Shown: positions 17,101 through 53,100 of the stretch, in pieces
Layout: each line of letters starts with the position of its first letter
Position numbering within the stretch: position 1 is the first letter of the stretch
From: Pecten maximus
Taxonomy: Eukaryota
Direction: 5' to 3'
Assembly: GCF_902652985.1 (NCBI RefSeq)
Contig: NC_047021.1
Coordinates: forward strand, 20,894,001-20,958,000
Length of the DNA: 64,000 bases
Notes under the pieces: generated by a model
Seen by the model: the letters and a program-made list of their open reading frames with translations, nothing else
Told to the model about the DNA's origin: nothing
Database searches by the model: none
Position numbers and translations under genes: made by a program

Positions 17101-20100
17101 TGATGTTGATGTCTATATCTGTCAGATGTTGATGTCTTTATCTGTCAGATGTTGATGTCTTTATCTGTCAGATGTTGATGTCTTTATCTGCCTGATGTTG
17201 ATGTCTTTATCTGTCTGATGTCAATGTCTTTATCTGTCAGATGTCAATGTCTTTATCTGTCAGATGTCGATGTCTTTATCTGTCTGATGTTGATGTCTTT
17301 ATCTGTCTGATGTTGATGTCTTTATCTGTCAGATGTTGATGTCTTTATCTGTCTGATGTTGATGTCTTTATCTGTCAGATGTCAATGTCTTTATCTGTCA
17401 GATGTTGATGTCTTTATCGGTGAGATTTTGATGTCTTTATCTGTCAGATGTTGATGTCTTTATCTGTCTTATGATGATGCCTTTATCTGTCTGATATTGA
17501 TGTCTTTATCTGTCAGATATTGATGTCTTTATCTGTCAGATGTCAATGTCTTTATCTGTCAGATGTCAATGTCTTTATCTGTCAGATATTGATGTCTTTA
17601 TCTGTCAGATGTTGATGTCTTTATCTGTCAGATGTTGATGTCTTTATCTGTCAGATGTTGATGTCTTTATCTGTCTGATATTGATGTCTTTATCTGTCTG
17701 ATGTTGATGTCTTTATCTGTCTGATGTTGATGTCTTTATCTGTCTGATATTGATGTCTTTATCTGTCAGATGTTGATGTCTTTATCTGTCTGATGTTGAT
17801 GTTGTCTGATGTCAATGTCTTTATCTGTCTGATGTCGATGTCTTTATCTGTCAGATGTTGATGTCTTTATCTGTCTGATGTTGATGTCTTTATCTGTCAG
17901 ATGTTGATGTCTTTATCTGTCTGATGTCAATGTCTTTATCTGTCAGATGTTGATGTCTTTATCTGTCAGATGTTAATGTCTTTATCTGTCAGATGTTGAT
18001 GTCTTTATCTGTCTGATGTTGATGTCTTTATCTGTCTGATGTCAATGTCTTTATCTGTCAGATGTCAATGTCTTTATCTGTCAGATGTTAATGTCTTTAT
18101 CTGTCTGATGTTGATGTCTTTATCTGTCAGATGTCAATGTCTTTATCTGTCAGATGTTGATGTCTTTATCTGTGAGATTTTGATGTCTTTATCTGTGAGA
18201 TTTTGATGTCTTTATCTGTCAGATGTTGATGTCTTTATCTGTCAGATATTGATGTCATTTTCTGTCAGATATTTATCACAAACATTTATATTCAGATTTT
18301 GGTCTCGATCCTTGTTTTTTTCAGATGATGATCACAGACATCAACTTTATTTCAATCTCTTTATTCATATTCGAATATACTTAGTTTTAAATGTCACATG
18401 TTGATATCTGAAATCAGCAAGATTACCCACATGAACAGGTAAGAAACACAAAAAGTACCAATTTGTTGATCTGCTTGAATAAATCTATGTAAAAATTTAC
18501 CTTTCCTGAGGTTGAGCGTAAGGTAGATATGGACACGGGTCACCGAGCAGGACAGAGGTAACGGTCGCCATACTGTTTGATATGGACGACAGATTGTAGC
18601 CTCCCTGTCAAACACAAATTGAATATCGAGTTACAACAACAAAAATGTTACATGTAAAGCCAACATCTAACAAGTACAATTTTTTTTTTAAATAAACTTT
18701 AATATTGATCCTAGGAAAAAAGATATATGTATGAAGATCTTACCTCCAAGGCAACTATTACTCTCCCATTGGCCAGTGAGGACAGCATGTGGGTCATGTG
18801 ACCATACCCAGCAGGTGTGATGTGGTATCCACCCTAAAACAAACGTGTAATCATAGAGTACAGGCAATACAGAGAGATGACAAAGAAAAAAGTACAATGA
18901 CTAGTGAGCAGACAGAGTGGACGAAATCATGCGTATGTATACTATACAGGTATATATCAGCTAAAGTATGGTGTAACCTGCCTGACCACATCAGTTTTCT
19001 CCGAGAACTCCGGTTCCCATCCACAGTATAAAGACCCCTTACATGCTTCAATTGAGCAACAAGCGTAATAAATATAAGTTGACACAACTTGTTGTGTAAT
19101 TGTTACACTGTATAGACCAAGTATGAAATATACATTGATGTCTGTCTTCTTGTGTTGAATTACCTGATTTAACCTAATAAGTATGTATAACAGCAAACAA
19201 ATCTGTCTGTACTCCAAGACAAAAATAGAACGTCCAATCAAATCACAGAAACACAGTAAATTATAACTTACCAGTGGATCACCCAGGGCAGCATCAAACC
19301 CAGCCGACACCAACACAAGTTCAGGGGCAAACTATAAGGTCAAAGGTCACATCATTGTATATCAATAATGAGTACACATTTCTTTTGTTGATTCTATCCA
19401 GTTCAATAATAAATACTTTATAGACTCTCGATTTACAACAAAAATAAAATATATCGTCATTGATTTAGTTGAAAAGATTATCGTGAAACAAAACAAAGAT
19501 CAAGAATAAAATACTGAAATATACGAAGGGCAGTAACTCTTTCAAAGGTTTTTGAATCACAACGTTTATCAAGTTTCAAAGCAATCGGTTTGAAAATATC
19601 CGAGGAGATCTCCTGAAAAACACAAGTTTTTGCTTGATGCTGGACAGAAGGATGGACAGAGGAAATCTCGGGACAAATACAAAGTTAATGTCAGAAGAAA
19701 GAACACCATATCACAATACTGTTGTAAACTTTTGATATATCTAAGAACATTGATTAATTTAGATGTAATTACATGAGACATATGTTTCCCCTATGTAAAT
19801 TAGTGCCATGTAAATTGTTGAGTTTTACCTCATAAGCAATGGGCATCACTACTTGTTGGAAGGCAGCCTTGTATTCTGCATCACCTTTGGGGCCCTTTGA
19901 TTAAAAAATAATCATTTATTTTGTAAATTAAAAAAAAAAACTGTTACAACATTAAAACAATATTTCTTTTCTCTCAATCAAAGAGTTAGATTTGTGCTTA
20001 AAGAAAACAAAAAACAATGATATTTGCAAACTATATTATGGATTCAAAAGAAAAAGTGATAAAAGAGTTTTATTAAGTACATGTAGCAACAGAATGCATG

Positions 20101-23100: not shown

Positions 23101-26100
23101 ACTTTATGTTTCTATGGTTATCTGTGATAAATGCTTAGTTATACCATACAAATAATCACTTTATGTTTCTATGGTTATCTGTGATAAATGCTCAGTTATA
23201 CTGTGCAAATCTGTGATAAATGCTTAGTTATACTGTGCAAATAATCACTTTATGTTTCTATGGTTATCTGTGATAAATACTCATTATACTGTGTAAATGA
23301 TCACTGTATGTTTCTATGGTTACCTGTGATAAATGCTTAGTTATACTGTGCAATTGATTACTTTATGTTGTGAGATAAGGTCAGGTGATAAGCATTCACA
23401 TGACTATGATTTTTTAACCTCATGTTGAAATCAATTTTCACCAACCATGAAAATTGCAAAATATATATTATATAGTATATGAAATGAGTTGAAGAACAAA
23501 ATGACAGATTCTTACCGTTTTATTCCGAATTTGTTTTGAGCATATTTGGCTGCAATGGCAACACTGTTGAAGAAACAGAATCCCATGGCCTTTGTACATT
23601 CCGCGTGGTGACCAGGAGGCCTTAATAAATTAACAAAATTCAAATAATTAAATTTCTACCAACAATACCTTTATTAGACAAAAAATTCTTTGGTTGTATT
23701 TTAAGGAAATGACCTGAATTTTTTTTCATGACCAGGGCTTTTTCTCCCTAATTTGGGATTTGGCCTCTAACTGGTAATTTTGGGAACTTGGCCTAAATAC
23801 GAAATAATTTAAATTGGGAATGGAGTCCATTATCCATCCCAAAAAGCCCTCAGAAAATGTCTTAAATTAAATGAGAATAAATATGAAGGTATTTCAGAAC
23901 TTTTATATGATTTGTTCAAAACAGATAAGTTTATCTTGTGTAATTTTCAAATCTGTCCATATTAATTCATAAAGTCTGAAATCTCTGGTTTACTTAATAT
24001 CCTTATATCACAGTAAGGAAGCTAACATATCTCCGTACTATTAGAGATAACAGGCTAACATATCTCCGTACTATTAGAGATAACAGGCTAACATATCTCT
24101 GTACTATTAGAGATAACAGGCTAACATATCTCCGTACTATTAGAGATAACAGGCTAACATATCTCCGTACTATTAGAGATAACAGTAAGTAAAGATGCAG
24201 TCTGAAGTGAGTATCAATGTCACAGTAAGGTGGCATACTTTCTTAAAAACCCACTATTGGCCTACATCACAACAGCTACCCCACTTTAGCCTACCTCACC
24301 ACAACTACCCCACTGTTGGCCTACCTCACCACAGCTACCCCATTGTTGGCCTACCTCACCACAACTACCCCACTTTTGGCCTACCTCACCACAGCTACCC
24401 CACTGTTGGCCTACCTCATCACAGCTACCCCACTGTTGGCCTACCTCACCACAGCTACCCCACTGTTGGCCTACCTCACCACAGCTACCCCACTGTTGGC
24501 CTACCTCACCACAACTACCCCACTGTTGGCCTACCTCACCACAACTACCCCACTGTTGGCCTACCTCACCACAGCTACCCCACTGTTGGCCTACCTCACC
24601 ACAGCTACCCCACTGTTGGCCTACCTCACCACAGCTACCCCACTGTTGGCCTACCTCACCACAGCTACCCCACTGTTGGCCTACCTCACCACAGCTACCC
24701 CACTGTTGGCCTACCTCACCACAGCTACCCCACTGTTGGCCTACCTCACCACAGCTACCCCACTGTTGGCCTACCTCACCACAGCTACCCACTGTTGGCT
24801 CACCTCACCACAGCTACCCACTGTTGGCCTACCTCACCACAGCTACCCCTCTGTTGGCCTACCTCACCACAGCTACCCCACTGTTGGCTCACCTCACCAC
24901 AACTCCCCCACTGTTGGCATACCTCACCACAGCTACCCGACTGTTGGCTCACCTCACCACAACTACCCCTCTGTTGGCCTACCTCACCACAGCGACCCCA
25001 CTATTGGCCTGTCCTGACAACACAGCATCCGTTACACTAAGAACACATCCTGCTGCCATCCTGGCACACACATTGGTTTCCTGAACAGAAGAAGAAACAC
25101 AGTACTGTCAAAAAAGTATTCAATATGTCACCTATTAACTGAGACAAAAACCTTGAAACATTATTCCCTTTCTCATGCAATTATTGTTATATCAATTTGC
25201 CTTTCTGTCCCTTAGATTGATAAGAAGAACTTGTGTAACTAGTGTAAAGAAATAACTGCTGACTGAAAGATGATTTGCATGTGCTGAAATTTGGAACATT
25301 ATCAAGTCACTTTTTATAACGCAGATATTGTCCAATTTAGAGATAGGTTAGTTTGCTATGATGTACACTGAGGAAGCATTGAAGTTAGGTCTCAATCTTA
25401 CCGGGCACATATAGATGGAATTGAAGCTATGCTGTAAATTTCTTAGTTCCATGGGAGGTAACTCTGCTGATGCTTGCATCTGTTCTATGTAGGATGAACT
25501 AAGGAGACAAAATAGTGTGTTATTACAATGAAGAGCTATCACAAAACATGTAACTACAACAATTACAAGTGACAACTAGATTGACAGGTACCCTACATCA
25601 GAGGACCTAAAGGTCTTGTTTTAATACCTGATCAATTATTATACTGGTTATTATATTTTGATTTTTTGGGGTATTTTTGGTTATTTTTGGGCCTTTTCAG
25701 AATATATTTCTTTGTATAAGAGCTGTGGTATCACAGTTACTACTATAGCAGGAATATATCTAGAAGTGCCTATAGATTGATTAAGAAGTTATTCAAGGGT
25801 AATATTTCAATATCTTACAATTCATAATTATAAACATAAGATTAATTGGAATTTTTTTTTAATACTGTATAATAATTTCTTTTCCTATTTCTATCATATT
25901 TATGTTGTTAGGGTAGTTGATCTTGACAAATCTAGATACTAAATATTACCTGTGTACAGTCTGTATTTCTCCATCTGTAGCGAGCCGAGACTGTAATCAA
26001 CAGGTAAATATATATGATCACAACAGTTATCTCTCATATATCATTGTTACAATATCATGTCATACATGCAAATGTACATCTCAACATGTAATGACATAAT

Positions 26101-29100
26101 GCAGAATTCTCCCTAATATCACCTTCCCCGATTCTTTAGATGAAATCTTAAAATTTCTTTTCCATGCAATAAGACAGGTAAGATTATGGTCTAGTTAAAA
26201 CTTGGAATTAACAAATATTGCATGGATGAATGATTTTTATTCGAAATACTCTATCTCATTATACTTCTTACAAAATATTACCAAGTTTTTAGTTTTCAAC
26301 ACACAATTACACTTTAATAAGTTTACCTGGACCCGTAAACACCTATCCAACAAACCCCATTCTGAATGCTTGTCAAATATACTTGTGACGCGATCCGGGT
26401 CCTCTGGATGTCTGAAAACAAACCTCTCAATATTATAACAATACTGGTACACCAAGGGTATAATCAAATTAGAAAATTTGTTTCTACTGGACACTAAGTA
26501 CCTTTTACAATCTGGATATCTAAACTCAAACATTCCAAAGAGTTTTAATTGTAGAAGCAGAAATGAATCTATTACACTGAAACAATTGTACCAATAGAAT
26601 ATAGATCTGCCTAAAAATTTTCATTGCCCTAGCAACCAACAATTTTTACAATAAACGTAACACCCTGGATCATTTAACTTGTTTAAGTAATGTATGACTA
26701 CATATTGCATTAAAGCAATGATTTATTTGGTAGGCGGTTGCCATTCATTTATTTTCAGGTGAGGGTGACCTCTTCTTTGGAGGAGTGAAATAACTTACCC
26801 TCTGAATGTGATAGCGTGGTGGACTCGCATGCCTTCATCATACACGATACAGGTCCTACAAAAATACACCAATATAATTTATTAATAGTAAATTCTTCTA
26901 CTGCAAATGGTAAACTTAAACTCATTTTAGTACATACTATATCTTAATAACGTAATCATTTACTACAACGTAATTGTCTGATTTTGTGACGTCGTATCAG
27001 AGATCACACGTGAAATAGCCAGGGCATGGGAAAAAATTCCACTTTTTCCTGACTGGGAATAGTGTATCATATGCACACAGAGAGAAAGTTTAAACCCAGG
27101 ACACCCTTACATTTCATCCATCAAATGTACTCTTAATTAAGCTATTTTGACAGAAAAACTAGCACTGTGAAAATGAGATCTAACATAACAAATCATCACT
27201 CCGCTACATGGCTTTAACTCACTTGTTAGGGGGTGTGGCGAGGGAGGTCTCTGCGATCAGCTGATCGATGACTGGGTCAAATTTATGTTGTATAATATAC
27301 TCCTCCTCCACCCCATCCTCAAACTCGTACATGATAGGAAACTCCTTTGGTTTGTTCTCCTCTGTGACAAATGGCATATCTGGCCTAAAGTCAGAAGAAA
27401 ATGGTCCCATCAGTTTCTTAGGAACAGCAGTAAAAATCATCAAATGTCAAAATGAAAATGGCCGCTGCTTACAGAATAACTGATCATCAAAGAGAACCTA
27501 TTTGAAAAGCCAACCGAGCGCTGATGTTGAGCTGAAAATTTCACTTGAATATTGCCTCCTTGGTTTGTACAATTAAATCATGAGTAATTTATTTTCATTT
27601 TGATCTAGCTGATAAATCATTCAGCTTAGAACTTCAAAACTTAAAGAGGAGGCTGATCTTGTAATCATTGTAAACTAAACCTCCCCAACATTTATTGACA
27701 ACTGTTGAAATTTTTTCAATTACAAGACACCAGACTGTTTCTTACTTTGGAGGCATTTCGTTGACATCTTCAAAGGGACATAACTCTTCCCAGGTTAGCT
27801 CTGTCTGGTAGCTAAAACAGCTCCAGTATGGACGTAGAACTTTGATCACATTCAGGATGGTGGATGTTATACTGTAACAATATCAAGTGTTCATTGCAGT
27901 ATGGGGGCTGACTAGACAACAAATTTGAAAATGAAGCCATGTTATTTCCTTAAACTGCACAATATTTTGTGAAATATCATAAAAATACAACATAACAAAA
28001 ATAATCTAGGCTATCAACCAAACCATTAATAATTCTTTCATACAGTTATACCTATATATAGCAAGCATTAACAGTTTATATCATTGCGATATAACATTAA
28101 AATCTCCATTTTTCAATTGTACATGTATGCTTTATAGAAAGCGTTCTCAGGAAAACCTTGTTTCAAAAATGTAAAAAGGAAATCAAAGAGCAAGTAGGAA
28201 TGACTTGTTCTTAAAGGGTTTTGTGGTGATATACTTACCTTGATAGTGCCTAACGAGGTAATACACACCTGTGACAAGGGTCGCCCATGGCAGGCAACAT
28301 AGGACAGGAGTCGCCAAGGAGAGTTCTCAATGTTAGAGCCACTGCCTCAGACAGCGATTTTATACAGTACCCACCCTGTAACATTACATGTTATACCACT
28401 GACACAGTTATAACTTATAATTCGTAGGCTAGAGGCAAGTTAAAGGGCTAAGTTTATTTAGGGTAAAACTACAATTTGTATCCATACCTCCAAACATATA
28501 CACACACGCCCCTCTGCCAGCGACATCAACGTATGGGTCATGTGGGCGTAAGCTACTGGAGTAACTCGCATCTCACCCTGTCAATCAAACAAAAAATATG
28601 TAAAGAATTTGGATGTGTAAGAGGTCCAGCAGGTCAATAAAGCTTACTAATAACACAGATCAACCAGGTCAATAAAGCTTACCAATAACACAGATCAACC
28701 AGGTCAATAAAGTTTATCACTGACATATATCAACAGTAAAGGACACAGTCATTGTAAGAACATTGACAATGTTTATTAGCTAAAATCAATATTTATTATA
28801 TTTATCTATTCAAATCATAACTAAAAATGACAAAATCACTGATCATAATATATATACAACAGGAAATATATATTCTTTAAGAACATTTCTTAGGATAATA
28901 AGATATATGCAAAATTAGAATTCTGAATGCTGACTTTGTCATGCAGCCAATGCAATTCAACTATCATTGTAACAGATAGAAATTAATTATCAGAAATGTC
29001 TGCTTACATAATGTATATATCGCAGCAACATCCTTGGATCCTACTCTATATGTATTTCACATAGCTAACTTAAAACAACCCATGGATCCTACTCATTCAA

Positions 29101-32100
29101 CATGGCCGATGTCACCTATCCTTAGATCTAACCCATTTAACATGGCCGACAAAGACCATCATTGGATCCTACCCATTTAACATGGCCGACAAAGACCATC
29201 ATTGGATCCTACCCATTTAACATGGCCGACACAGACCATCGATCCTTGGATCCTACCCATTTTATATGGCTGACATAGATCATCGTTGGATCCTACCCAT
29301 TTCACATGGCCGACACAGACCATCGATCCTTGGATCCTACCCATTTAACATGGCCGACGTCACCTACCCTTGGATCCTACCCATTTCACATGGCCGACGT
29401 CACCTACCCTTGGATCCTACCCATTTCACATGGCCGACGTCACCTACCCTTGGATCCTACCCATTTCACATGGCCGACGTCACCTACCCTTGGATCCTAC
29501 CCTATATGTATTTCACATGGCCGAAGAAACCTCTCGTTGGATCCTACGTCTAGATGTTTTTCCATTATACATCAATTAGCAATAAGTTATGTCAGCAAAA
29601 GACATGAAGGCAATAGGCTGGGACAGGAACTGCTCAGCACTCCACATTAAAAGCACATCAATATCATGAATTTCTAGTATGCATTAATACAATATTAATA
29701 CTAAAACATTTTGTATTATATAACCTTTTTGTCATATCATGTAAGGCACAGCCATAAACACTATGATACAATCTTACCTTATATCATATATAACATTATA
29801 TTATAGAATATATTATCTTGATATGAATAAACCTACATGATACATAATATTACATTATCTTGTCATAAATAATCCTACATTGAATACCTTATATAATATT
29901 AAATTATCTTGTTATAAATCATCCTAAATATCAGCTTATATCATATTAAATTATCTTGTTATAAACAATCCTACATATTGTCTTATATAAACAGTATCTT
30001 GATATAAATAAACCTACATAATATTGTATATAATATTACATTTTCTTGTCATAAATAATCCTACATATCATACATATTACATTATCTTGTTATAAATAAT
30101 CCTACATAATATTATCTTACATAATCTTACATTATCTTGTTACAAATAATCTTATATATTATTTTATATAATGTTACATTATCTTGATATAAATTAACCT
30201 ACATAATATTATACATAATATTACATTATCTTGTTATAAATGATCTTACATGATATTATCTTGCATCATCTTCTCAGAAAATAGCATATATATTTATATC
30301 CTGTAATGTACTCTCTACAAATTGTCTTACATTTATCCTCCATTACTTTACTATGATTTCTGACTTGATAAGGTCCTTACTTCACCTTATCTTGCAGTAA
30401 CTGACCTTGTAGTCCCCGATAGCCGCATCATAGCCCCCAGAAATAAACACCAGGTCTGGAGAGAACTAAGGTAGAAACAACACTGATCTATCAGTCTATA
30501 TTATATATTAAATTCCACTAAACATCAGCCTTCCATAGCCGCCAGAAGCATGCATACATTCATGCCAGGATTTCTACCTATTGAGTAAAAGGGTCAGTAC
30601 AAGATTGTAGTTCAGTATCATCTGTCCTGATGTCATGGAGCCCATCTTTTACAAGTATACTTCAAAAGTCCTTGTTAATTTTTGAGGTCCTGCCCTTGGC
30701 TTGTTTGGAAACAACATTCTATTCACTTTACGCTTCATTCCAAAAAACACATTTCTGTTTAATGTGCAGAAAACTGTTGAAATTTCAGTGTACATTTTAA
30801 TATATTACACAAATGTTTTTGAAAGCTTCTGTGATATGCTGGCAAACACATATACAGTGGTACAGAGACAAGATTACTCAACAGTGAGGAAATTCAAGTG
30901 CAGATCATTTGTTTCTAAATCCATAGACTTTGACAATAGGACTCTCGATCAACACAAGACAAATTTCACTCTACTTCAACAATGTATTATATCTTCTGTG
31001 AGGTTGTATTAGCTGGTAAAACAAGATAGGATTTAATTGCATCAGTGCAAAGGTCTTAACTATATTTGGCAGTTGTTACTAGATTTAGAATCTAAAGACA
31101 AAGTTAACATGAAAAAAAGATTTTGGATAAAGTGGGTTTTTTTATCTTCTATCATTTAATGTTGAACTTTTTTTGATGATTGAAGTTATTGGCAGAACCA
31201 AAAGTCATTAAATTTACATTCTAAAGACTGAGTTAACCTGAAAAAAGATTTTGGATAAAGTGGGTTTTTTTTATCTTCTATTATTCAATGTTGATTTTTT
31301 TTTTTTTATGATTAAAGTTAATGGCAGAACTAAAAGTCATTAAATTTACATTCTAAAGACTGAGTTAACCTGAAAAAAGATTTAGGATAAAGTATTTTCT
31401 TATTTTCTATAATTTAATGTGGAAAATTTTTGTCTGATGATTAAAGTTATGAAGTTGGAATTTATCATAGAAAGAATGATAAAAGGGAATATTAATGCTG
31501 AAGACTTATAGAAACATATCTTTATTTCAGCCAAATATTGTCTCATTTAAATGACATTAAAAAATCATTTGAAATTCATTTATTTTGATTCCATTTAATG
31601 AAAGTTTTTAAAAGTGTTTTAGAAATCCAGCCACTAAGCAGTTTATTTTTAGTAATCCTGTTGAAATCATTTGTAGATGTTAGACTTTGGTCACAGAGCT
31701 GTTTATCGAGTATTTATGTTGAAATCATTTGTAATTTGAGACTTAGAATCTAGTGCATAAAATATCATAAATATTTCATAATTAGGAATGTTGTATAAAA
31801 TCTATATTAATACATTGTTAACTTCTGTAGCTTTACTTGGGACATACATGTAGGTATGAAGCTGGTGTTACAGTCCTGCCTGTCTTTTACAGAAATCTAA
31901 TTAGCTGTACTGAAGCTACAACAAAACCACAGTTCACCATGCATATAAAACAAGTCAACCAACAAAGGGGACCCACACAACATACCAAACAACTGTAAAC
32001 CCCAAACATGCTGAATATTTAAATCACTTTTTACCATAATTCACAGTCTGATTATATTTACTTAAAACAAAAATTTTCCTTGTCACATCCTGAAAAGTTA

Positions 32101-35100
32101 TCATTTTTGACAGTGGTCAAAGTTTCTAAATTTGACAGTGGTCAAAGATTCTAAATTTGACAGAGGAAAGAGGAAAATGAGTTTGGAGTTTACAGTTGAT
32201 AGTTATATGCACAAAATTAAGTCCATGCCCCAGTATTCCGTCTGGTACCTCTGGACATCCGATGGCTGCATCATACCCGCTAGACACCAAAACTAGGTCA
32301 GGGCTGAACTAAAATAGAACAAAATTCCTCACATAATTAATGTAGTGCCTTATTCTAAAAATTTCATAACAACAGCTTCGTAAACACAAGTGCAATCAAT
32401 GATTGCGAAAGCTCACCGGCGGCAGCAATCACACTATGCATTCATTTTTTATGTATGTATAGGCATGTCATTTTGAAATTGTATGTCACATAATATCGCT
32501 CCTAGACCTCTAATGGTTGTATAAACCAAATAAGAAGGGTATGGACTTACAAGCTTTCCAAAACTAGCCCCCAAAATCTTTAAAGTGGGTTTTTGTGTCA
32601 AAAAAAGTAAGTCCACAAAATGGTCAAATGCGAAAAAATCACAATTTTTTTCTGCATGATTTTGCCATAACATCACTCCTAGACCTCTAATGAATGTATA
32701 AACCTAATTAGAAGGGCATGAGGTGTATACTTTTGGACTTAAAAGCTTTCCAAAAACTTACCCCAAAAACTTTAAAGTTTTGGGGTGGGACACCGACGCG
32801 GACGCCGGGGTGACAACATTAGCTCTCGGTTACTCGTAACCGGTGAGCTAATAACTATCACTCCATATAGCTGACAAAAAACAGGAATAAATATTATTTT
32901 AGAGTTGAGTTTTTGGTTTTCTCACATACTACATATGTTGATACTATGGTTGCTAGGGAGTCTCTTACCCTGACAGGGATTTCCGCAGTTTTATGGGGAT
33001 GAGATTTCCTTTTCTCTTACCCTGGACAGGGATATCCGCAGTTTTATGAGGATGAGATTTCCTTTTCTCTTACCCTGGACAGGGATTTCCGCAGTTTTAC
33101 CAGGTGAGATTTCCTTTTCTCTTACCCTGACAGGGATTTCCGCAGTTTTATGGGGATGAGATTTCCTTTTCTCTTACCCTGGACAGGGATATCCGCAGTT
33201 TTACCGGGGTGAGATTTTCTTATTTCACCCTAGGGAAAAGACAAGCTGCACATGCTCTTTGAACATGCTCTTGTTCTCAATGGGGTGCCGTTACTGACTG
33301 ACCTGACCCAGAACTACTTTTACGGGTCACGCAAAATTAGAGTTAACTGAGTGTTTGGTGTTCTTTTTAACAAGCTTATCGGAACTACATTTTGTATGAA
33401 ATCAACATCGTAAGGTGTAAAGCGTCTGCTGCAGCCTTATCACAATAGTCATCTGCCGTTCACATGTTATTTAAAAACGTTTGGATTTGGTTCACACTAC
33501 GATTGGAAAACAGGGTAAGAGAAAAATAAGCATTCACTCCTGTTTGGGATGAAAGAGGGGGATCTCAACCCTCAAGGGAGATTGTTAAGTTCCCAAACAC
33601 TTGACAAGCCTTGTGTTTGGGATTAAACAATTTCCCTTCTCAGACTGAGATTCCTCTATCTCACCCCAAAAGGGGTGAAAGATTCTATTATTCTCACACG
33701 GGGCAGGAAGAGTGTAAGCTGACGTGCGCTTAACGCTACTCACAGTAGGGTAGAGTCATAATTTTATGTAAAGTAATGATGACGCAAATTGATAACATCA
33801 TCAATTTTGATGTACATTACATGGGTCATTAAGGATGACAAGGTGAATAGGTTTCAAATTTTAATCTGTTACTTTTTAAATAAGCGAGAAAAAATTAATC
33901 AAATTTGAGCCTCGTGAGACAAACTCTTACAGTCGGGCTGAGATATCCCTGAAACCTCATGCTGTATTCTCAGTAGTATTGACACGACAATATTTTATAA
34001 AAGCTTTAACCTAGTTGTCAACAAAAGCAAAGAAGATCATGCCAGAAACAATATCATTTTACGAAATTTTTCAAATGCAAATAAATTCATCTGAAGGAAA
34101 TTCAGTAATACATTTAATGAATTGAGTAAATTCTTTTCACATCTTCAACATTCCGTATCAAATAATGGTAGACTTAAATAATCTTGATTGAGAAAGTTTT
34201 GAACATATTTATCAAATAAAACAGATTTCATGAAACCTACCTGATGAGCAATAGGCATCAAGACTTGGTGGAAGATAGCCAGATAATCTGTGTCATTCAT
34301 ATGGATCTGTACAACAGAGGGATGACAGCTTGATAATACTAGTACATCACAATACAGAGATATATAGGGGTAGTAAAGATCAATTTAACCAAGTTAAAAT
34401 ATAGGAAACAAACACTTTAAAACTCAGTATAATAAGTTGGCAAAATCAGTAATCCAATATAACATTAGTAATGACAATAGAGTTCTGTGATCATTTGATA
34501 ATTTCTGATATGTGAATATAGCCGTGGTCCAAAGACATTTATGAAAGGATACACAAACAGGACAATGGCTATATTACGTCGCTTTTATTTCAAGATAACA
34601 TTGATTCTATAAAAGCATATTTGAACGGAATAAAAAAAAGGTGAAATAAAACCTCTCCTAGCTTCATGCTTGTCCTGCTTCTGATAATAATCAATGGTAT
34701 TTTACTGTAAGCTCTGATTATCATATACAAACCTTATTCAGAGGTACATTGACATTGTACCCTTTACCGTTTCCCTCTCCAATAAAGTCATAGTCTGACT
34801 CCCTAAGATTAGGCCAGTACTTTCCATATTCATAACGATGGATGGAAAAGTACAGAACTCTGAAATAGAAAGATAAAGATATTTAGAAATTAGCTCAGAA
34901 CTGTACATGTGTATCAATTTCGTACAAGCATAAATTCCTGTGTATTGCCCGCTCTGTTAGATTACCTGGTCTATTAGATTGCCAGCACAAGACAAAATGG
35001 TTTTATAATTCAAAGACTGCAGATAGCCCAATTTGATACTTTGGCCACAGATTTAGTGCTCCATGTAAGTAATGAACCAGCGTACCAGCTATCAGGGTAA

Positions 35101-44100: not shown

Positions 44101-47100
44101 TTAACGATATACCGCATTTCACGAAGTCTTTAAAAGTCCCCTACTGAGCCTCTATATAAACCTTTGTAAATTAATCCTGTATTCATGAAGTCGCTATGTA
44201 CGAACTATCGCTTTGTGCGATATGGTCTGGGGGTCCCCACGGGATAATTTACCTGTATGTATGAACTGTGAAAACAACTCATTAACCCTACCCGATATAA
44301 ATCGCTGTAAAAACAAGTCACTGTTCATTTGTTTGTCACTTTATACACGAAAATTAAAACTTTTGGTGATCGGGAAATTTAAAAATCCCAGATGTTTTAA
44401 GAATGTAAAAAGTCTTCCCGTGGAATACCACGCGAACAAGAAAGCCTGGATGGTGACGGAACTATTCCGAGAATGGATTTTAAAACTTGATCGTAAGTTC
44501 AATCGACAGGGTCGTCAGGTTGTGATGCTTTTAGACAACTGCACTGCTCATCCGCATGTGGAGGGTTTGAGTTCAATCAAACTTGTGTTTTTGCCTCCAA
44601 ACACGACATCGAAATTACAACCGATGGACCAAGGCATAATAAACAATTTGAAACAGAAGTACCATCGATTCCTCATTGAATACTTGCTGAAATGTTTTGA
44701 TAAAAGTCTCACTCCTGAAATCAATCTCCGACTTGACTGGATATACCGAGCGTGGAAGTGTGTCACGCCCACCACGATTCGTAACTGTTTTTTGAAGGCC
44801 GGAATCGTGCATAACGAGGTCGTGACCTCGGTGAGTGACAGCTCATCAAGCGAAGATGACAACATCCCTCTGGCAACGTTAGCCAATGAATGGAGATCAA
44901 TCTCCGAGGACAAAATCTCGCTTGCCGATTTTGTGACGATCAACGAGGATATTGTCACCACTGAACAAACAACACAGAGTGATGTTATTGAGGAAATAAA
45001 AAACAAAATGGATAACAAATCGGAAGACTCTGAGTCGGACAGCGATAGTGATACTGGGGTTGAATTGAAAATTCCTACTCTCGTAGAGTTCGTGGACAGT
45101 GTTGACAAAATAAAAATGTTCGTAGAGTCACGCGAGAATGTCGATGAAACAATGTTTGCGTGTATCACCAAACTTTCTGACTTTGCTGACAAGTGTCATT
45201 ATTCTTCAAAACAGAAACAAATGACTGACTTTTTACGAAAGTATGAAAAAAAATGTTCGATGATCGCTCGCCGGTATATTTTCCTGTGTAACTGATACGT
45301 ACACGTGTACTGCATATAGGCTAATGTACACATGATTCAATGCATGCGTTTAGCTTACGTTGTGTTAATAACAATTTGTAAATAATAATTAAAATGTAAC
45401 ACAAGTTTAACAAAATGTCCAGTGATTGTTGTTTTTAAATACTGATCATACAGTTAGTGTTTACACATTTACGCTAGGCCTAGCTAGCCAGCTGGTGAAC
45501 GGTATATATATCGAGACTAATTTTAGACAGGGAGGACTGGTCGTGTTTCACGAAGTCCGGTTTCTACGAAGTTGTTTTCATGGTCCGACTGACTTCTTGA
45601 AAACCGGAGTTTACTGTAGTTACAGTGACCTTGACCTTTGGCCTGTGCACCAGTGAAAAAACAATCCGATGCAAGCACTTGTGTTGCAGAAAAAATTAAT
45701 GAAACCTGAGTTTGCCGGACCCAAAGAAACTTTAGCTATCACAAGGAAATAAATTTTCTATCTTTAGTTAACCTGTAGCAGATTTTCTATTTATAGTAAC
45801 AGTGACATTGACCTTTGACCTTTGAACCAGTCAAAAAACAATCCCATGCAAGCACTTGTGGTAAGTAAGAACTGCATGAAAATTGAGCTTGATCTGTCCA
45901 AGGGTCACATTGGAACAAATTTTCCATTTTTAGTAACAGAGATGTTGGCTTTCTAACTTCAGACCTGAAAGGCACTCCCAAGCAAGCACTTTGGTAAGGA
46001 AGATCTATGTGAAGTTTGAGTTAGATCGGCCCAAGGGATCTTGAATTAGCGCACGGAAGCCCCTGTGCAGATGATGACGCCAACACAGACACTAACATGA
46101 TACCTATATGTCACATACACTAAATGGTTTTATACATAAAGTGTTTCATTACCTCAATTCTCGTACACCTTTCTATAAGTCCTAGCTCTGAGCATCGGGC
46201 AAATGGTTCTGTTATGCGTTCTGGTTTCTCAGGGAAAGCTGGGTCCCATAGACATTGGAATTTGGCCATCCTATCATCGTACACCAGTCCAGAACTGTAA
46301 AACAAATGTGTATGTGTTATTGCAATTTATCAGACACCTGATTCTATCTCTCCAAACTTTTGAGGTTATTTTTAGGAATTTTCAAATGTTAACACCCAAC
46401 ATTTTCAAGGATATTTTCTTCAGGTTAATAAAAATAATATCCTATTGGTTGTGTCATATAACTTCTATCATATGACCCAACATTTGTATGGACATGAGAC
46501 AACTGTACCTAAATCCAATTAATGTGGTAATTTATTTCATATACAATCATGGCACTTTGTTTCATCTGATAAGATAATTTATGGAGTGGCTAAGGTTGAT
46601 ATTGGTTATATGAATAAAACAGTGCCATAACAGTTTCATTACATTTTGGTATCAAACTCAGAGCACACAATGCTGAAGATTAAATACGATTTAACTGCAT
46701 CTTATTCCATAACACTAACCAAAACGTCATAAATACTGCATCTTTGATAAAACATTGCTCTCTCGTGCAACTAGACAGAATTTGTCAGATAAATCTGATA
46801 AGCTAATGTGACGCCACAGAAACAATTTTTGATCACTGTCACAGAGCGCAATTCAAAGTTATGATGAAAAACATGTGATCAGATATAGAGCAATCAACAT
46901 CGGATACAATACTGAAAATATCTATATATATATATATGTGGCTTATGTGGCATTGATGTCAATTTTTTTTAGTTTCATAGGGGTATGAAAAAAATGTTGT
47001 TTGCAAACTGTATGAATCCGCATAGCGGATTCTTACAGAAGTTTGCAAACAACATTTTTTTCATACCCCAATGAAACTATACAAATAATTGACATCAACG

Positions 47101-50100: not shown

Positions 50101-53100
50101 TTGCTTTTCCAAATTTGTCTAGAAATTGCCATCCACAACTAGGAACTGAAAGGAATTTTCAAATTAAGTTAAAAAAATATCCTTCAANNNNNNNNNNNNN
50201 NNNNNNNNNNNNNNNNNNNNNNNNNNNNNNNNNNNNNNNNNNNNNNNNNNNNNNNNNNNNNNNNNNNNNNNNNNNNNNNNNNNNNNNNNNNNNNNNNNNN
50301 NNNNNNNNNNNNNNNNNNNNNNNNNNNNNNNNNNNNNNNNNNNNNNNNNNNNNNNNNCAGTTAACTGATCAATAGCTTGATATCAAAGGGATATAGAAAC
50401 CACATTTTTAAACACATGTCAGACCTGTCTCTTTAATAGTTATCTCAAGCAACCACAGATAAAAGACTCTAATGATATCTATAAGGCGACTGTGTATAAG
50501 GAAGTGTTATTCAACTGTCCTAGCATGCAACACCTTTGGGCCAGGTGAGCTATAATTGGCAAGAAAGTTTTTGATATTTTACCTGTACAGATGGAAGTGA
50601 CCTTACACAGAAGAGATAGCAAATACAAAACCACAGACATTAACAGCAACATGGCTTTAAATCTTCATAAACAAATATTTGCCAATATAGCCGGCTTTCA
50701 GTAGACCAGCTTGAGAATATATGGCTGTTAACTCCCTAAAATGAAATTGGACTCTTGGGTTTGAAAGGTATTATGTCAATTTGTCATGTTTTGATCCTTC
50801 AAATTTATGAAAAATGGTCATTTGACTTCTGAAATCCTTAAGTTGAGGATAAACGGAAACAGTCGTGACTCAGAGACATTCCTCCAAAAGATTAGACATT
50901 ATTTTAAGGCCCTAGAGTGAAGTGTATTCTTTATTTCAGCTTCTCATAAAACTTGAAAACTATACGTCTCCCCCAAACCATCTAGCCATTTGGACTCCTT
51001 TAGGTCTTTCCAATACCATCTGGCCATTTAGATTTCTTGTAAATTTTCAGTTATTGAACCAGTGGAGTGAATTAAGATACAATACAGGCAAACAAAAGGA
51101 AGCTGAATGACAATGTACAGGGTGGAAAATAATGGAACAAAGAGGTACAGTGAGCCTGTATATCTCATATATTGAAGCAATTATCATTGAATGCAACATC
51201 ACAAATACGAGGCTATCTAAAGCAAAATTTTAATAAAATTAAGGCTTTAATTACATTTACAGATTTGTAATATCAGAATGCCTCTGTAGAACTAACGACT
51301 GTCTGTACCAGTAAGGATACCAGATACATCATAGTGGAACCTAGCTGTTGTTTATCTCGCCTTAGTGATCTTACAATGATATTTACCTAAGTGTTATAAC
51401 ATCACTCAGTTTCTAATTCAAAGGTCACATTCTCACCAAGACCGTACACATTGTAATGGAATCCCTGCTTCCTCATTTCAGTCTTAGTCAATAACACTCT
51501 AATCTATCAGAGCTGTCATAACAAAACCATTTACAGCTTTTAGAGAAACCATTTTAGACCTTTGATCTCATGATCTCAAAAGACTTCCTTGTTTGAATAT
51601 AACCAACTTTACTTTGTAACAAAACAAAATGTTTACTACTTAAAAGATAGAAAATGTCTTTGACCTTTGCCCTAATGTTAAATCATCATAATTAATCAGC
51701 TGATTTTCCTTGTTTGAATCTTAACAGTTTTGATTCATATTGTTGAAAGATACAGAATTTGACAATTACCATTATTTTACCCAATTGCAGAAAGAAACAA
51801 TTATCTTGTATTTGCTTAGAATAAAAAAAAAAACATTATTTTTATTGAAAAAGAGGTCCAGAGGGCCTGTATTGCTCACCTGGATATATCAGGGACTATG
51901 TCAGAATAGTATAAAGAACCATTTCAAAATAATAGCTATATCTTTCCTATAATGGGTCCTGATCTTTGGGCCCCAGGGCCATAACCACCTTTTATACAAT
52001 TTATTTCAATTCCCCCAAGTGTGCTTTACATCATATTTAGACATGTTATTCCACAGAAAGAGAAGGATTTGGAATACTTCCTACATTTCCCCTATTGGGC
52101 TGCCTTTTATACACAGGGACCAAATCTTTCCATTCTCAAAGAATGTGGATTTTAAAGAATTTGCAAAATTTCATCTATTTGGCTCCGTCCTTAAGGGGCC
52201 AGACCCACTGCTATACAAATTGGTTCCCTTTCACCCAAGGGGACAAAGTTTGGTCAAAATCTACCAAGTCATTGACTGGTACGTAGCGATTCTTAGAGAA
52301 AAGATGGCAGATATATGGATGGACGACAGATGAAAGATGAAGGGTGACAGACAATGGCCAATGGCATAAGCTCATAAGGTTAGCTAATACCCGGTTTCCC
52401 TTTACCCATGGATGCTTCAGACCAAAGTTGGTCTGAATCCTGTCATTCCTACAGGAGAAGAAGGATTTCAAAAAGTTTGCTATATTTCCCCTATTGCGCG
52501 TGTACATGTACGATTTTGAATCCCCACTACCTAGGGATGCTATCAGTCAAATAGGAGTGATATTCACTGCTTAGTTCCGGAAAAGAATTTGTTTATATCA
52601 ATATACCGATAGTCAAATTGCCCCCTTTCGGTCTGATCCCTCAGCGACATTAGGATCAGACCTAACATTTGCACAATTATGAATCCCTACTAAATAGGGA
52701 TCAATACTAGCAATTAAATATGAGTGATATCTATAGCTTAGTACCAGTGAATTTGTTTATATCAATTTAATTTTGAATCCCCGCCACCTTGGGATGCATA
52801 CAGTTAAATTATGTTAAATTCCAATCACAGTGGTTATGAATAAGTCATTTGAAGAAATAGCTGATGAATGAACGAAGGACAACTAAGGTCCAGGTGAGGT
52901 AACAAGAGCCCTGGAGATAAAAACAATATATATATGCCCTGTCACATCCTATATACTGTTATATACTATCTTGTATCAAAATAAGATTTGCATAACCTTA
53001 TAAGTGGCTATCTGGCATGCTATCAATCTCACTTTTCACTAGCAGTGTATATTTTTGAACTTGCAAATCTCAAGACCCTACTTTTTATTCTCGTATATAG

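What the first reader, a model, noticed from the sequence alone, without database searches (positions are those of the whole stretch)
30406..32308. Mutually exclusive exon pair swaps the CD1 gatekeeper: HDAC10-like Glu versus HDAC6-like Lys in one gene
Seen: two paralogous 60-nt phase-0 exons with intact splice sites, 1783 nt apart, encoding [20 protein letters not shown] and [20 protein letters not shown]. Both keep the Zn-ligand Asp. Many synonymous positions differ while the frame stays open, which suggests both are under selection. The equivalent CD2 exon is single and ends GDPL. Established: this position controls specificity. It is Glu in HDAC10 (zebrafish E274, favours cationic acetylpolyamines), Lys in HDAC6 CD1 (zebrafish K330, favours C-terminal acetyl-lysine) and Leu in HDAC6 CD2. 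Inference: one invertebrate gene may reverse the charge at the active-site mouth by splicing, covering functions that vertebrates split between HDAC6 and HDAC10. Including both exons would stay in frame and the intron is long, so neither NMD nor simple steric spacing explains exclusivity. Caveat: the L1 loop ([12 protein letters not shown]) lacks the HDAC10 PEACE helix, so full polyamine selectivity is not assured. I cannot verify novelty without a literature search.
Basis: partly seen in the sequence, partly recalled or inferred. Interest (0 to 1): 0.95.

Follow-up and report, generated by a model that had tools for sequence, protein, structure and literature searches.

The report
Gatekeeper-swapping exon pair in scallop HDAC6
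A scallop HDAC6 gene carries two alternative copies of one 20-codon exon that put either a glutamate (as in HDAC10) or a lysine (as in HDAC6) at the mouth of its first active site. The same pair is kept in molluscs, a nemertean, a brachiopod-like sequence, crustaceans and insects, so one gene probably makes two enzymes with different substrate preferences.

Summary
On the minus strand of a Pecten maximus HDAC6-like gene lie two 60-nt phase-0 exons, A (32308-32249, ...GCPE) and B (30465-30406, ...GDYK), with AG/GT sites, 1783 nt apart.

- **Position:** their last residue aligns with zebrafish HDAC10 E274 (A) and HDAC6 CD1 K330 (B).
- **Use of A:** RNA contigs join the upstream exon to A in 4 of 4 runs, and A to the downstream exon, skipping B, in 3 of 4.
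- **Use of B:** it is seen only indirectly, through depth confined to it in one RNA run.
- **Existing annotation:** RefSeq already models both forms, X1 and X2, which differ at six residues.
- **Conservation:** the same E-then-K pair, or equal-length isoform pairs differing only there, occurs in other bivalves, abalone, octopus, a nemertean (34 nt between the copies), a brachiopod-like sequence, crayfish, an amphipod and many insects.
- **Absent as a pair:** scorpion and leech have E only, and a hemichordate has K only.
- **No substitute gene:** the scallop genome has no other class IIb paralog.

The change of substrate is inferred, not shown. The first active-site loop (L1) is HDAC6-like and lacks the HDAC10 insertion. 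I found no paper describing this. Strict mutual exclusivity in the scallop and its mechanism remain open.

The parts
34241..34306 (-). Constitutive upstream CD1 exon ([22 protein letters not shown]), phase 0, donor gtaggt
   Evidence: Sequence. RNA contigs join 34241 to 32308 in 4 of 4 runs. It matches XP_033746720.1 residues 322-344.
32249..32308 (-). Alternative exon A, the Glu form ([20 protein letters not shown]), with a weak donor gtacca
   Evidence: Contig joints run 34241->32308 and 32249->28577. It is present in RefSeq isoforms X1, X3 and X4. Residues 1-20 align to zebrafish HDAC10 chain 255-274, ending at E274. Only 2 of 60 nt differ from Ylistrum.
30406..30465 (-). Alternative exon B, the Lys form ([20 protein letters not shown]), donor gtcagt
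   Evidence: It matches RefSeq isoform X2, XP_033746720.1, at 100%. Residues 1-20 align to zebrafish HDAC6 CD1 FQPQLVLVAAGFDAVIGDPK, ending at K330. RNA run X4 has depth only in the two bins that hold this exon, in the ratio its borders predict. It is intact in Ylistrum, with 4 synonymous and 2 conservative changes.
28488..28577 (-). Constitutive downstream CD1 exon (GEMRVTP...CICLE), acceptor tgacag
   Evidence: It is joined to exon A in 3 of 4 runs.
32181..32198 (-). 5' arm of a conserved intronic stem, 51-68 nt downstream of the exon A donor
   Evidence: It forms 18 bp with 32007-31990. The stem is kept in Ylistrum, with one A-U to G-C double change. It appears in the minimum-energy and centroid folds of both species. 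The sequence is single-copy in the genome.
31990..32007 (-). 3' arm of the same conserved intronic stem
30949..30997 (-). Best-conserved intronic block between A and B (84% identical to Ylistrum over 49 nt); role unknown
46150..46296 (-). Constitutive CD1 exon that encodes the L1 loop ([13 protein letters not shown]), shared by both isoforms
   Evidence: It aligns without gaps to human and zebrafish HDAC6 CD1. HDAC10 chains are two residues longer over the same stretch.
19272..19331 (-). Equivalent single exon of CD2 ([20 protein letters not shown]), with a Leu gatekeeper

Best explanation
This is a conserved pair of tandemly duplicated alternative exons in the first catalytic domain (CD1) of the only class IIb deacetylase gene of Pecten maximus.

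**How it works.** Each mRNA takes the upstream exon, then exon A or exon B, then the downstream exon. The choice rewrites six residues. Three lie at the active-site rim: Cys-Pro-Glu in A, Asp-Tyr-Lys in B. The last of these is the gatekeeper that sets substrate charge preference in vertebrate HDAC10 (Glu) and HDAC6 CD1 (Lys).

**Shown**
- The anatomy of the pair.
- Use of A with B skipped.
- The equivalence of the residue position.
- Conservation of the E-then-K pair in molluscs, a nemertean, a brachiopod-like sequence and pancrustaceans.
- Unusually low nucleotide divergence of the two alternative exons.

**Probable.** B is used in some samples.

**Inferred**
- The Lys form prefers substrates with a free carboxylate, meaning C-terminal or free acetyl-lysine.
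- The Glu form accepts cationic substrates such as acetylpolyamines, but less selectively than HDAC10, because the HDAC10 loop insertion is missing.

**Control of the choice.** Exclusivity is enforced at splicing, not by frame. In the nemertean, 34 nt between the exons is probably too short to splice. In the scallop the mechanism is unknown. Weak conserved donors and a conserved stem just downstream of exon A are candidate control elements.
For: - **Anatomy:**
- **RNA contigs:** joint 34241->32308 in X3, X4, X5 and X18, and joint 32249->28577 in X3, X4 and X5.
- **Exon B in X4:** depth is 0.65 and 0.48 in the two bins holding exon B and zero in the neighbouring bins. This fits a contig of depth about 3.8 over 30406-30465. 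The leftover depth in the flanking exons would fit such a contig reaching about 25 nt into each. The A contig has depth 4.16.
- **RefSeq:** Pecten X1 against X2, and Mizuhopecten X1 against X2, differ only in this exon.
- **Same pattern elsewhere:** crayfish, a mosquito and two beetles, and two octopus species.
- **Genomic pairs:** Ylistrum, then mayfly and nemertean.
- **Residue mapping:**
- **Gatekeeper biochemistry:** E274L changes HDAC10 specificity. K330E blocks free acetyl-lysine hydrolysis by zebrafish CD1.
- **No other class IIb locus in this genome:**
- **RNA-level constraint against Ylistrum:** exon A differs at 2 of 60 nt and the flanking exons at 29 of 156 nt (p = 0.004).
Against: - No contig joint to exon B was listed, and 22 joints were not shown. 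B use in the scallop therefore rests on depth arithmetic and a computed RefSeq model.
- Contigs cannot show absence, so double inclusion or double skipping, both in frame, is not excluded.
- Models of Ruditapes, Ostrea, Saccostrea and Neodiprion carry both exons in tandem.
- No enzymology exists for any invertebrate isoform.
- The L1 loop is HDAC6-like.
- The Glu exon has Cys where HDAC10 has Asp.
- Arthropod Lys exons read Asp-Glu-Lys, so the local charge is not simply reversed.
- Outside the last three residues, E and K exons of one species are more alike (0.71) than E exons of different phyla (0.67). A single ancient origin is therefore parsimonious but not proven.
Confidence: 0.75

Rival explanations
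1. The exons are real alternatives, but the swap does not change substrate class. It might tune CD1 activity, stability, partner or inhibitor binding, or redox sensitivity through the Cys of the Glu exon.
For: - The L1 loop lacks the HDAC10 insertion, whose removal cut polyamine activity 15-fold in zebrafish HDAC10.
- The Glu exon always carries Cys at -2: 89 of 89 distinct peptides.
- Arthropod Lys exons read D-E-K.
Against: Single gatekeeper substitutions alone shift specificity strongly in both vertebrate enzymes: E274L by 20-fold and about 100-fold, and K330E in zebrafish CD1. E and K are each invariant within their exon type across phyla.
Confidence: 0.15
2. The pair is not strictly mutually exclusive. 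In-frame mRNAs with both exons, or with neither, are also made, so splicing acts partly as an on/off switch for CD1.
For: - Both exons are 60 nt, so no frame penalty applies.
- RefSeq or ab initio models with both exons exist in Ruditapes X2, Ostrea edulis X2, Saccostrea X2, Neodiprion X2 and others.
- The scallop intron between the exons is long, at 1783 nt.
Against: - Scallop contigs show A joined directly to the downstream exon.
- Pecten, Mizuhopecten, octopus, crayfish, mosquito and beetle RefSeq sets have equal-length single-exon isoforms.
- In Tubulanus only 34 nt separate the exons.
- Tandem inclusion would duplicate a core strand and the Zn ligand.
Confidence: 0.07
3. Exon B is a little-used or decaying duplicate, and isoform X2 is an annotation artefact carried over by homology.
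For: Three of four RNA runs show only the A form, and no B joint was listed.
Against: - B is intact, with the same splice sites, in Ylistrum. It has 4 synonymous and 2 conservative changes.
- The K-type exon is kept in the same position in other molluscs, a nemertean, crustaceans and insects.
- In run X4 the depth is confined to B.
- An intronless Logan contig (P0015, 2473 nt for 799 aa) carries a GDEK form.
Confidence: 0.03

Closest known systems
Vertebrate HDAC6 catalytic domain 1 (gatekeeper K330 in zebrafish, K353 in human)
   Same: - The architecture is the same: two tandem deacetylase domains plus a zf-UBP finger.
- Exon B ends in the aligned Lys.
- The L1 loop has the same length.
- The catalytic His-His, Asp and Tyr motifs are present.
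   Different: In the scallop the Lys is optional, and the form seen in most RNA runs has Glu. The residue before the Lys is Tyr, not Pro.
Vertebrate HDAC10, a polyamine deacetylase (gatekeeper E274 in zebrafish, E272 in human)
   Same: Exon A ends in the aligned Glu. Scallop CD1 scores as well against HDAC10 (417 bits) as against HDAC6 CD1 (405-410 bits).
   Different: - There is no two-residue insertion in the L1 loop.
- The motif is Cys-Pro-Glu, not Asp-Pro-Glu.
- The second domain is an intact CD2 followed by zf-UBP, not a pseudo-deacetylase domain.
Mutually exclusive exon pairs that change the properties of an enzyme or receptor (PKM exons 9/10, FGFR2 IIIb/IIIc, tropomyosin exons 2/3); named from general knowledge
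   Same: These are also tandem homologous exons of equal length, with one chosen per mRNA and a swapped functional determinant. In Tubulanus the 34-nt spacing resembles the steric mechanism of tropomyosin.
   Different: Double inclusion here stays in frame, so no nonsense-mediated decay backstop applies. In the scallop the exons are too far apart for steric exclusion. No docking/selector set of sequences was found.
RefSeq isoforms XP_033746719.1 (X1) and XP_033746720.1 (X2) of Pecten maximus 'histone deacetylase 6-like'
   Same: They are exactly this exon choice. Both are 1184 aa and differ at six residues between positions 351 and 364.
   Different: They are computed models without comment. 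The link to the gatekeeper and the cross-phylum conservation is not annotated, and I did not find it in the searched literature.

Membership tests
Class IIb deacetylase, HDAC6-type | Two tandem Hist_deacetyl domains followed by a zf-UBP finger | tested here: met
   PF00850 and PF02148 are recorded on the Pecten proteins. Both domains match PDB HDAC6 chains with E of about 1e-247, and the C-terminus matches the 5g0f chain (named only 'HDAC6' in the PDB table). PF00850 exon hits lie in the window.
Class IIb deacetylase, HDAC6-type | Catalytic motifs intact in both domains (PPGHH, Zn-ligand Asp, EGGY) | tested here: met
   The translated exons contain LVRPPGHH and [11 protein letters not shown] and GFD, and LEGGY.
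Mutually exclusive exon pair | Adjacent homologous exons of the same length and phase with their own splice sites | tested here: met
   Both are 60 nt, phase 0, with AG/GT sites and 14 of 20 residues identical.
Mutually exclusive exon pair | Each exon is spliced to the same flanking exons | tested here: inconclusive
   For A both joints are seen. For B there is only depth confined to the exon in run X4 and RefSeq isoform X2.
Mutually exclusive exon pair | mRNAs with both exons or with neither are absent or rare | tested here: inconclusive
   Contigs cannot show absence, and 22 joints were not listed. Models with both exons exist in other species.
HDAC10 (polyamine deacetylase) | Glu gatekeeper | tested here: met
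   The last residue of exon A aligns to chain position 274 of zebrafish HDAC10. The role of E274 is given.
HDAC10 (polyamine deacetylase) | Insertion in the L1 loop (the 3-10 helix etaA2) that narrows the active site | tested here: not met
   Over the same stretch the scallop has 46 residues and HDAC10 has 48. The alignment to HDAC6 CD1 has no gaps.
HDAC10 (polyamine deacetylase) | Single active domain followed by a pseudo-deacetylase domain, with no zf-UBP | tested here: not met
   CD2 is intact and zf-UBP is present.
HDAC6 CD1 (specific for C-terminal or free acetyl-lysine) | Lys gatekeeper | tested here: met
   The last residue of exon B aligns to the Lys of zebrafish CD1 ...GDPK. The role of K330 is given.
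Docking-site/selector RNA competition (as in Dscam or 14-3-3 zeta) | One docking sequence complementary to a selector sequence next to each variant exon | tested here: not met
   Only one conserved stem was found, downstream of exon A, and there is no further copy of either arm in the window.

The most novel reading that the evidence does not exclude
The single class IIb deacetylase of early protostomes, and perhaps of early bilaterians, already used a Glu/Lys gatekeeper exon switch to make two enzymes from one gene: one accepting polyamine-type cationic substrates, the other specific for carboxylate-bearing acetyl-lysine. Vertebrates reach the same division with two genes, HDAC10 and HDAC6. 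Amphioxus evolved its own Met/Lys exon pair at the same site. On this reading the gatekeeper is a recurrent evolutionary switch point, and invertebrate 'HDAC6' would be the missing invertebrate polyamine deacetylase.
Probability: 0.3. Interest if true: 0.9.

Novelty: new member of a known kind. Interest (0 to 1): 0.72.

Why it matters
The gatekeeper residue is the best-documented determinant of substrate choice in class IIb deacetylases. Until now it has been studied through point mutants of vertebrate enzymes.

Here nature appears to make the K-to-E swap by splicing, and the swap is kept across several protostome phyla. This gives enzymologists two natural isoforms to compare.

It also raises the possibility that invertebrate HDAC6 is also a polyamine deacetylase. 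Most protostome models, including Drosophila melanogaster, carry the Glu form.

Finally, it offers a test case for how an in-frame exon pair with a long intron is kept exclusive. It also bears on how HDAC6 inhibitors or knock-outs in insects and molluscs should be read.

Tried and rejected
- **Docking/selector pairing.** The inverted-repeat scan of 28440-34420 gave mostly AT-rich chance pairs. Only the stem downstream of exon A is conserved in Ylistrum, and its arms have no third copy. Pair I5 (30341-30365 with 33754-33778) has one arm in a stretch that does not align with Ylistrum.
- **Duplex scan.** The scan with the conserved 49-nt block gave no clear result.
- **Mobile element.** The stem region is single-copy in the genome.
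- **Third exon copy.** None was found in the window.
- **Separate HDAC10-like gene in the scallop.** None was found.
- **Single origin of the pair from sequence alone.** Identity over residues 1-17 does not separate the E and K lineages.
- **Hidden second copy.** None was found in the hemichordate, scorpion, leech or Babylonia gene 1.
- **Loci that could not be read.** Mizuhopecten and Babylonia gene 2 were too long. Asterias and lamprey were not on record.
- **Amphioxus 'GLAE'.** In model P0072 this is a splicing artefact of the model, not a gatekeeper.
- **Spliced model.** Exons were searched one by one by reference, and whole proteins were taken from the databases.
Full report
**1. Observation**

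The window carries, on its minus strand, a class IIb deacetylase gene with two catalytic domains. CD1 exons lie at about 46300-28260 and CD2 exons at about 26400-18500. At the reported place there are two 60-nt exons.

- Exon A is 32308-32249 and reads [20 protein letters not shown], flanked by ttttag|...|gtacca.
- Exon B is 30465-30406 and reads [20 protein letters not shown], flanked by ccttag|...|gtcagt.
- They are 1783 nt apart.
- The neighbouring exons are 34306-34241 (...MPIAHQ|gtaggt) and 28577-28488 (cag|GEMRVTP...). All boundaries are phase 0.
- A and B share 38 of 60 nt. Eight codons differ synonymously and six differ in amino acid.
- The matching CD2 exon is single (19331-19272...GDPL), and no further copy exists in the window.

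**2. Identity of the gene**

RefSeq protein XP_033746720.1, 'histone deacetylase 6-like isoform X2' of Pecten maximus, matches the window exon by exon at mostly 86-100% (lower where an alignment runs past an exon border). It includes exon B at 100%. The assembly has 918,306,378 bases in 3983 contigs. I take the window to be P. maximus.

The protein has two PF00850 domains and a zf-UBP finger, and it matches solved HDAC6 structures. Its CD1 scores equally well against zebrafish HDAC10 (417 bits) and HDAC6 CD1 (405-410 bits).

Exons were searched singly by reference, and full-length proteins came from the databases.

**3. The residue position**

- Exon A aligns over all 20 residues to zebrafish HDAC10 chain positions 255-274, so it ends on E274.
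- Exon B aligns over all 20 residues to zebrafish HDAC6 CD1 FQPQLVLVAAGFDAVIGDPK, so it ends on K330.
- Hai et al. 2017 (PMC5454378) show that E274 of HDAC10 and K330 of HDAC6 CD1 (K353 in human) are the gatekeepers.
- In that paper, E274L lowered N8-acetylspermidine activity 20-fold and raised acetyl-lysine activity about 100-fold.
- A 2026 preprint (10.64898/2026.05.22.727066) reports that zebrafish CD1 hydrolyses free acetyl-lysine and that K330E inhibits this.
- The L1 loop of the scallop ([13 protein letters not shown], exon 46296-46150) aligns without gaps to HDAC6 CD1. HDAC10 is two residues longer there. Removing that HDAC10 insertion cost 15-fold polyamine activity.

**4. Use in RNA**

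Four runs labelled as the same organism were laid on 28440-34420. All are assembled contigs, so they show presence only.

- The joint 34241->32308 is present in all four runs.
- The joint 32249->28577 is present in three runs. Exon A is therefore used and B skipped.
- No joint to B was among the 15 listed, and 22 were not shown.
- In run X4, a declared RNA library, depth is 0.65 in bin 30240-30439 and 0.48 in bin 30440-30639. It is zero in the bins on either side.
- A contig of depth about 3.8 that covers exactly 30406-30465 gives these two numbers, since 34 nt and 26 nt of the exon fall in the two bins.
- My own arithmetic on the leftover depth of X4 in the flanking exons also fits such a contig, reaching about 25 nt into each.
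- The A contig in the same run has depth 4.16.

This is suggestive, not proof.

**5. Annotation**

- RefSeq already holds both forms. P. maximus X1 (XP_033746719.1, exon A) and X2 (exon B) are both 1184 aa and differ at six residues between positions 351 and 364.
- Mizuhopecten yessoensis X1 and X2 differ in the same way, GCPE against GDYK.
- In Ylistrum balloti only the Glu form is annotated, but an intact Lys exon lies in the intron at L001:16824-16883.

**6. Conservation**

| Evidence | Taxa |
|---|---|
| Equal-length RefSeq isoform pairs differing only in this exon, always G-C-x-E against G-D-x-K | crayfish Procambarus, mosquito Sabethes, beetles Cylas and Euwallacea, two octopus species |
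| Models holding both exons in tandem, Glu exon first | Ephemera, Trinorchestia, Ladona, Neodiprion, Mactra, Ruditapes, oysters, a Lingula-like sequence, and two gastropods (Gigantopelta, Batillaria) in which only the start of the second copy was read |
| Both exons seen in genomic DNA, 198 nt apart | mayfly Ephemera |
| Both exons seen in genomic DNA, 34 nt apart, probably too short to splice | nemertean Tubulanus |
| Glu exon only, DNA checked | scorpion, leech (GDPE), one Babylonia gene |
| Glu form only among the proteins seen | higher flies including D. melanogaster, ticks, a tardigrade, a rotifer, flatworms |
| Both forms | lower flies |
| Lys exon only, same exon architecture | hemichordate Ptychodera |
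| Lys models only | echinoderms and a lamprey; among other vertebrates only human and zebrafish chains were read (coelacanth is Leu, see item 10) |

Over all proteins collected there are 89 distinct C-x-E peptides, 85 D-x-K peptides and 9 D-x-E peptides.

Outside the last three residues, E and K exons of one species are more alike (0.71) than E exons of different phyla (0.67). One ancient duplication, with some homogenisation within species, is therefore the parsimonious reading. The same order, the same borders and the same signatures support it, but it is not proven.

**7. Selection and RNA-level constraint**

Between Pecten and Ylistrum:

| Exon | Nucleotide differences | Type of change |
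|---|---|---|
| A | 2 of 60 | both synonymous |
| B | 6 of 60 | 4 synonymous, 2 conservative |
| The two flanking constitutive exons | 29 of 156 | 20 synonymous, 5 amino-acid changes |

A against the flanks gives p = 0.004, and A+B against the flanks also gives p = 0.004. Low synonymous change is typical of regulated alternative exons. Both unusual donors (gtacca, gtcagt) are identical in the two scallops.

An 18-bp stem whose arms lie 51-68 and 242-259 nt downstream of the exon A donor is kept in Ylistrum. It shows one A-U to G-C double change and two G-U wobble pairs, and it closes both the minimum-energy and the centroid folds in both species. The sequence is single-copy in the genome. Two species are too few to call it proven.

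**8. No substitute gene**

A search of the whole assembly with the Pfam model, with the downstream exon and with the full protein found no second class IIb locus.

**9. Mechanism and limits**

Most likely the gene makes two CD1 variants by choosing one exon.

- The Lys form should behave like vertebrate CD1, preferring substrates with a carboxylate.
- The Glu form should accept cationic substrates, but less selectively than HDAC10.

This is inference from vertebrate mutants. The Glu exon has Cys where HDAC10 has Asp, and arthropod Lys exons read D-E-K. How exclusivity is kept in the scallop is unknown. Frame, intron length and a docking/selector system do not explain it.

**10. Novelty**

Seven literature searches found no paper that describes this exon pair or a Glu gatekeeper in invertebrate HDAC6. 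The library does not hold most subscription journals. The isoforms themselves are public computed models. I rate it a new member of a known kind, of clear interest to HDAC enzymology.

Seen in passing:

- Amphioxus has its own pair of 139-nt exons at the same site, with Met against Lys.
- Babylonia has an E-only gene beside a long model that carries the K exon.
- Coelacanth CD1 has Leu at this position.

Noticed in passing
L002:3430-3568 and L002:3876-4014 (Branchiostoma belcheri): Amphioxus HDAC6 has two tandem 139-nt exons covering the same site, with different borders from the 60-nt exon. Copy 1 has a Met gatekeeper (GDRM|GDM) and copy 2 a Lys (GDPK|GEM). Including both would shift the frame. 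Copy 2 has a 1-nt gap in this assembly. The B. floridae model P0273 holds both copies. This looks like an independent exon duplication at the gatekeeper.
   Followed up: partly
L006:4309-4368 and L006:4403-4462 (Tubulanus polymorphus): The Glu and Lys exons of the nemertean are separated by only 34 nt (gtatacacta...tctaatctttag). This is probably too short to be spliced out, so exclusivity there would be steric.
   Followed up: yes
L007:9657-9716 (Babylonia areolata), with proteins P0172 and P0194: One Babylonia gene has only the Glu exon. A second model on the same chromosome, spanning 302 kb, carries a GDEK exon with different upstream exons but an identical downstream exon. It could be a partial duplication or an alternative 5' module. 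The DNA of the long model could not be read.
   Followed up: partly
Proteins P0398-P0434: All higher-fly HDAC6 models seen, including Drosophila melanogaster (P0413), have the Glu form GCPE in CD1. Mosquitoes, sandflies and gall midges have both forms. The Lys exon may have been lost in Brachycera.
   Followed up: partly
Proteins P0163, P0167, P0173 and P0240: RefSeq 'isoform X2' models of Ruditapes, Ostrea edulis, Saccostrea cucullata and Neodiprion pinetum contain both exons in tandem. These are either real double inclusion or model artefacts.
   Followed up: no
window 32386-33950: The intron upstream of exon A holds repeats with very high summed depth in all four RNA runs (hundreds to thousands), many variants and internal joints. 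This looks like an expressed repeat family. It includes a 15-nt motif repeated four times, about 52 nt apart, at 33010-33181.
   Followed up: no
window 24289-25000: A long tandem repeat in a CD2 intron reads as an open frame, [10 protein letters not shown] repeated.
   Followed up: no
G000:C7:20755529-20780446 and G000:C3678:5589-7343: The 3' exons of the gene lie 115-140 kb beyond the window, so the gene spans more than 190 kb. A small contig, C3678, holds a 88-93% identical copy of those exons, probably an uncollapsed haplotype.
   Followed up: no
Protein P0335 (Latimeria chalumnae HDAC6 isoform X2): Coelacanth CD1 reads GDPL|GEM. This is a Leu gatekeeper, where other vertebrate CD1 domains have Lys.
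   Followed up: no
window 50188-50357: A run of 170 N, an assembly gap. It was left untouched.
   Followed up: no
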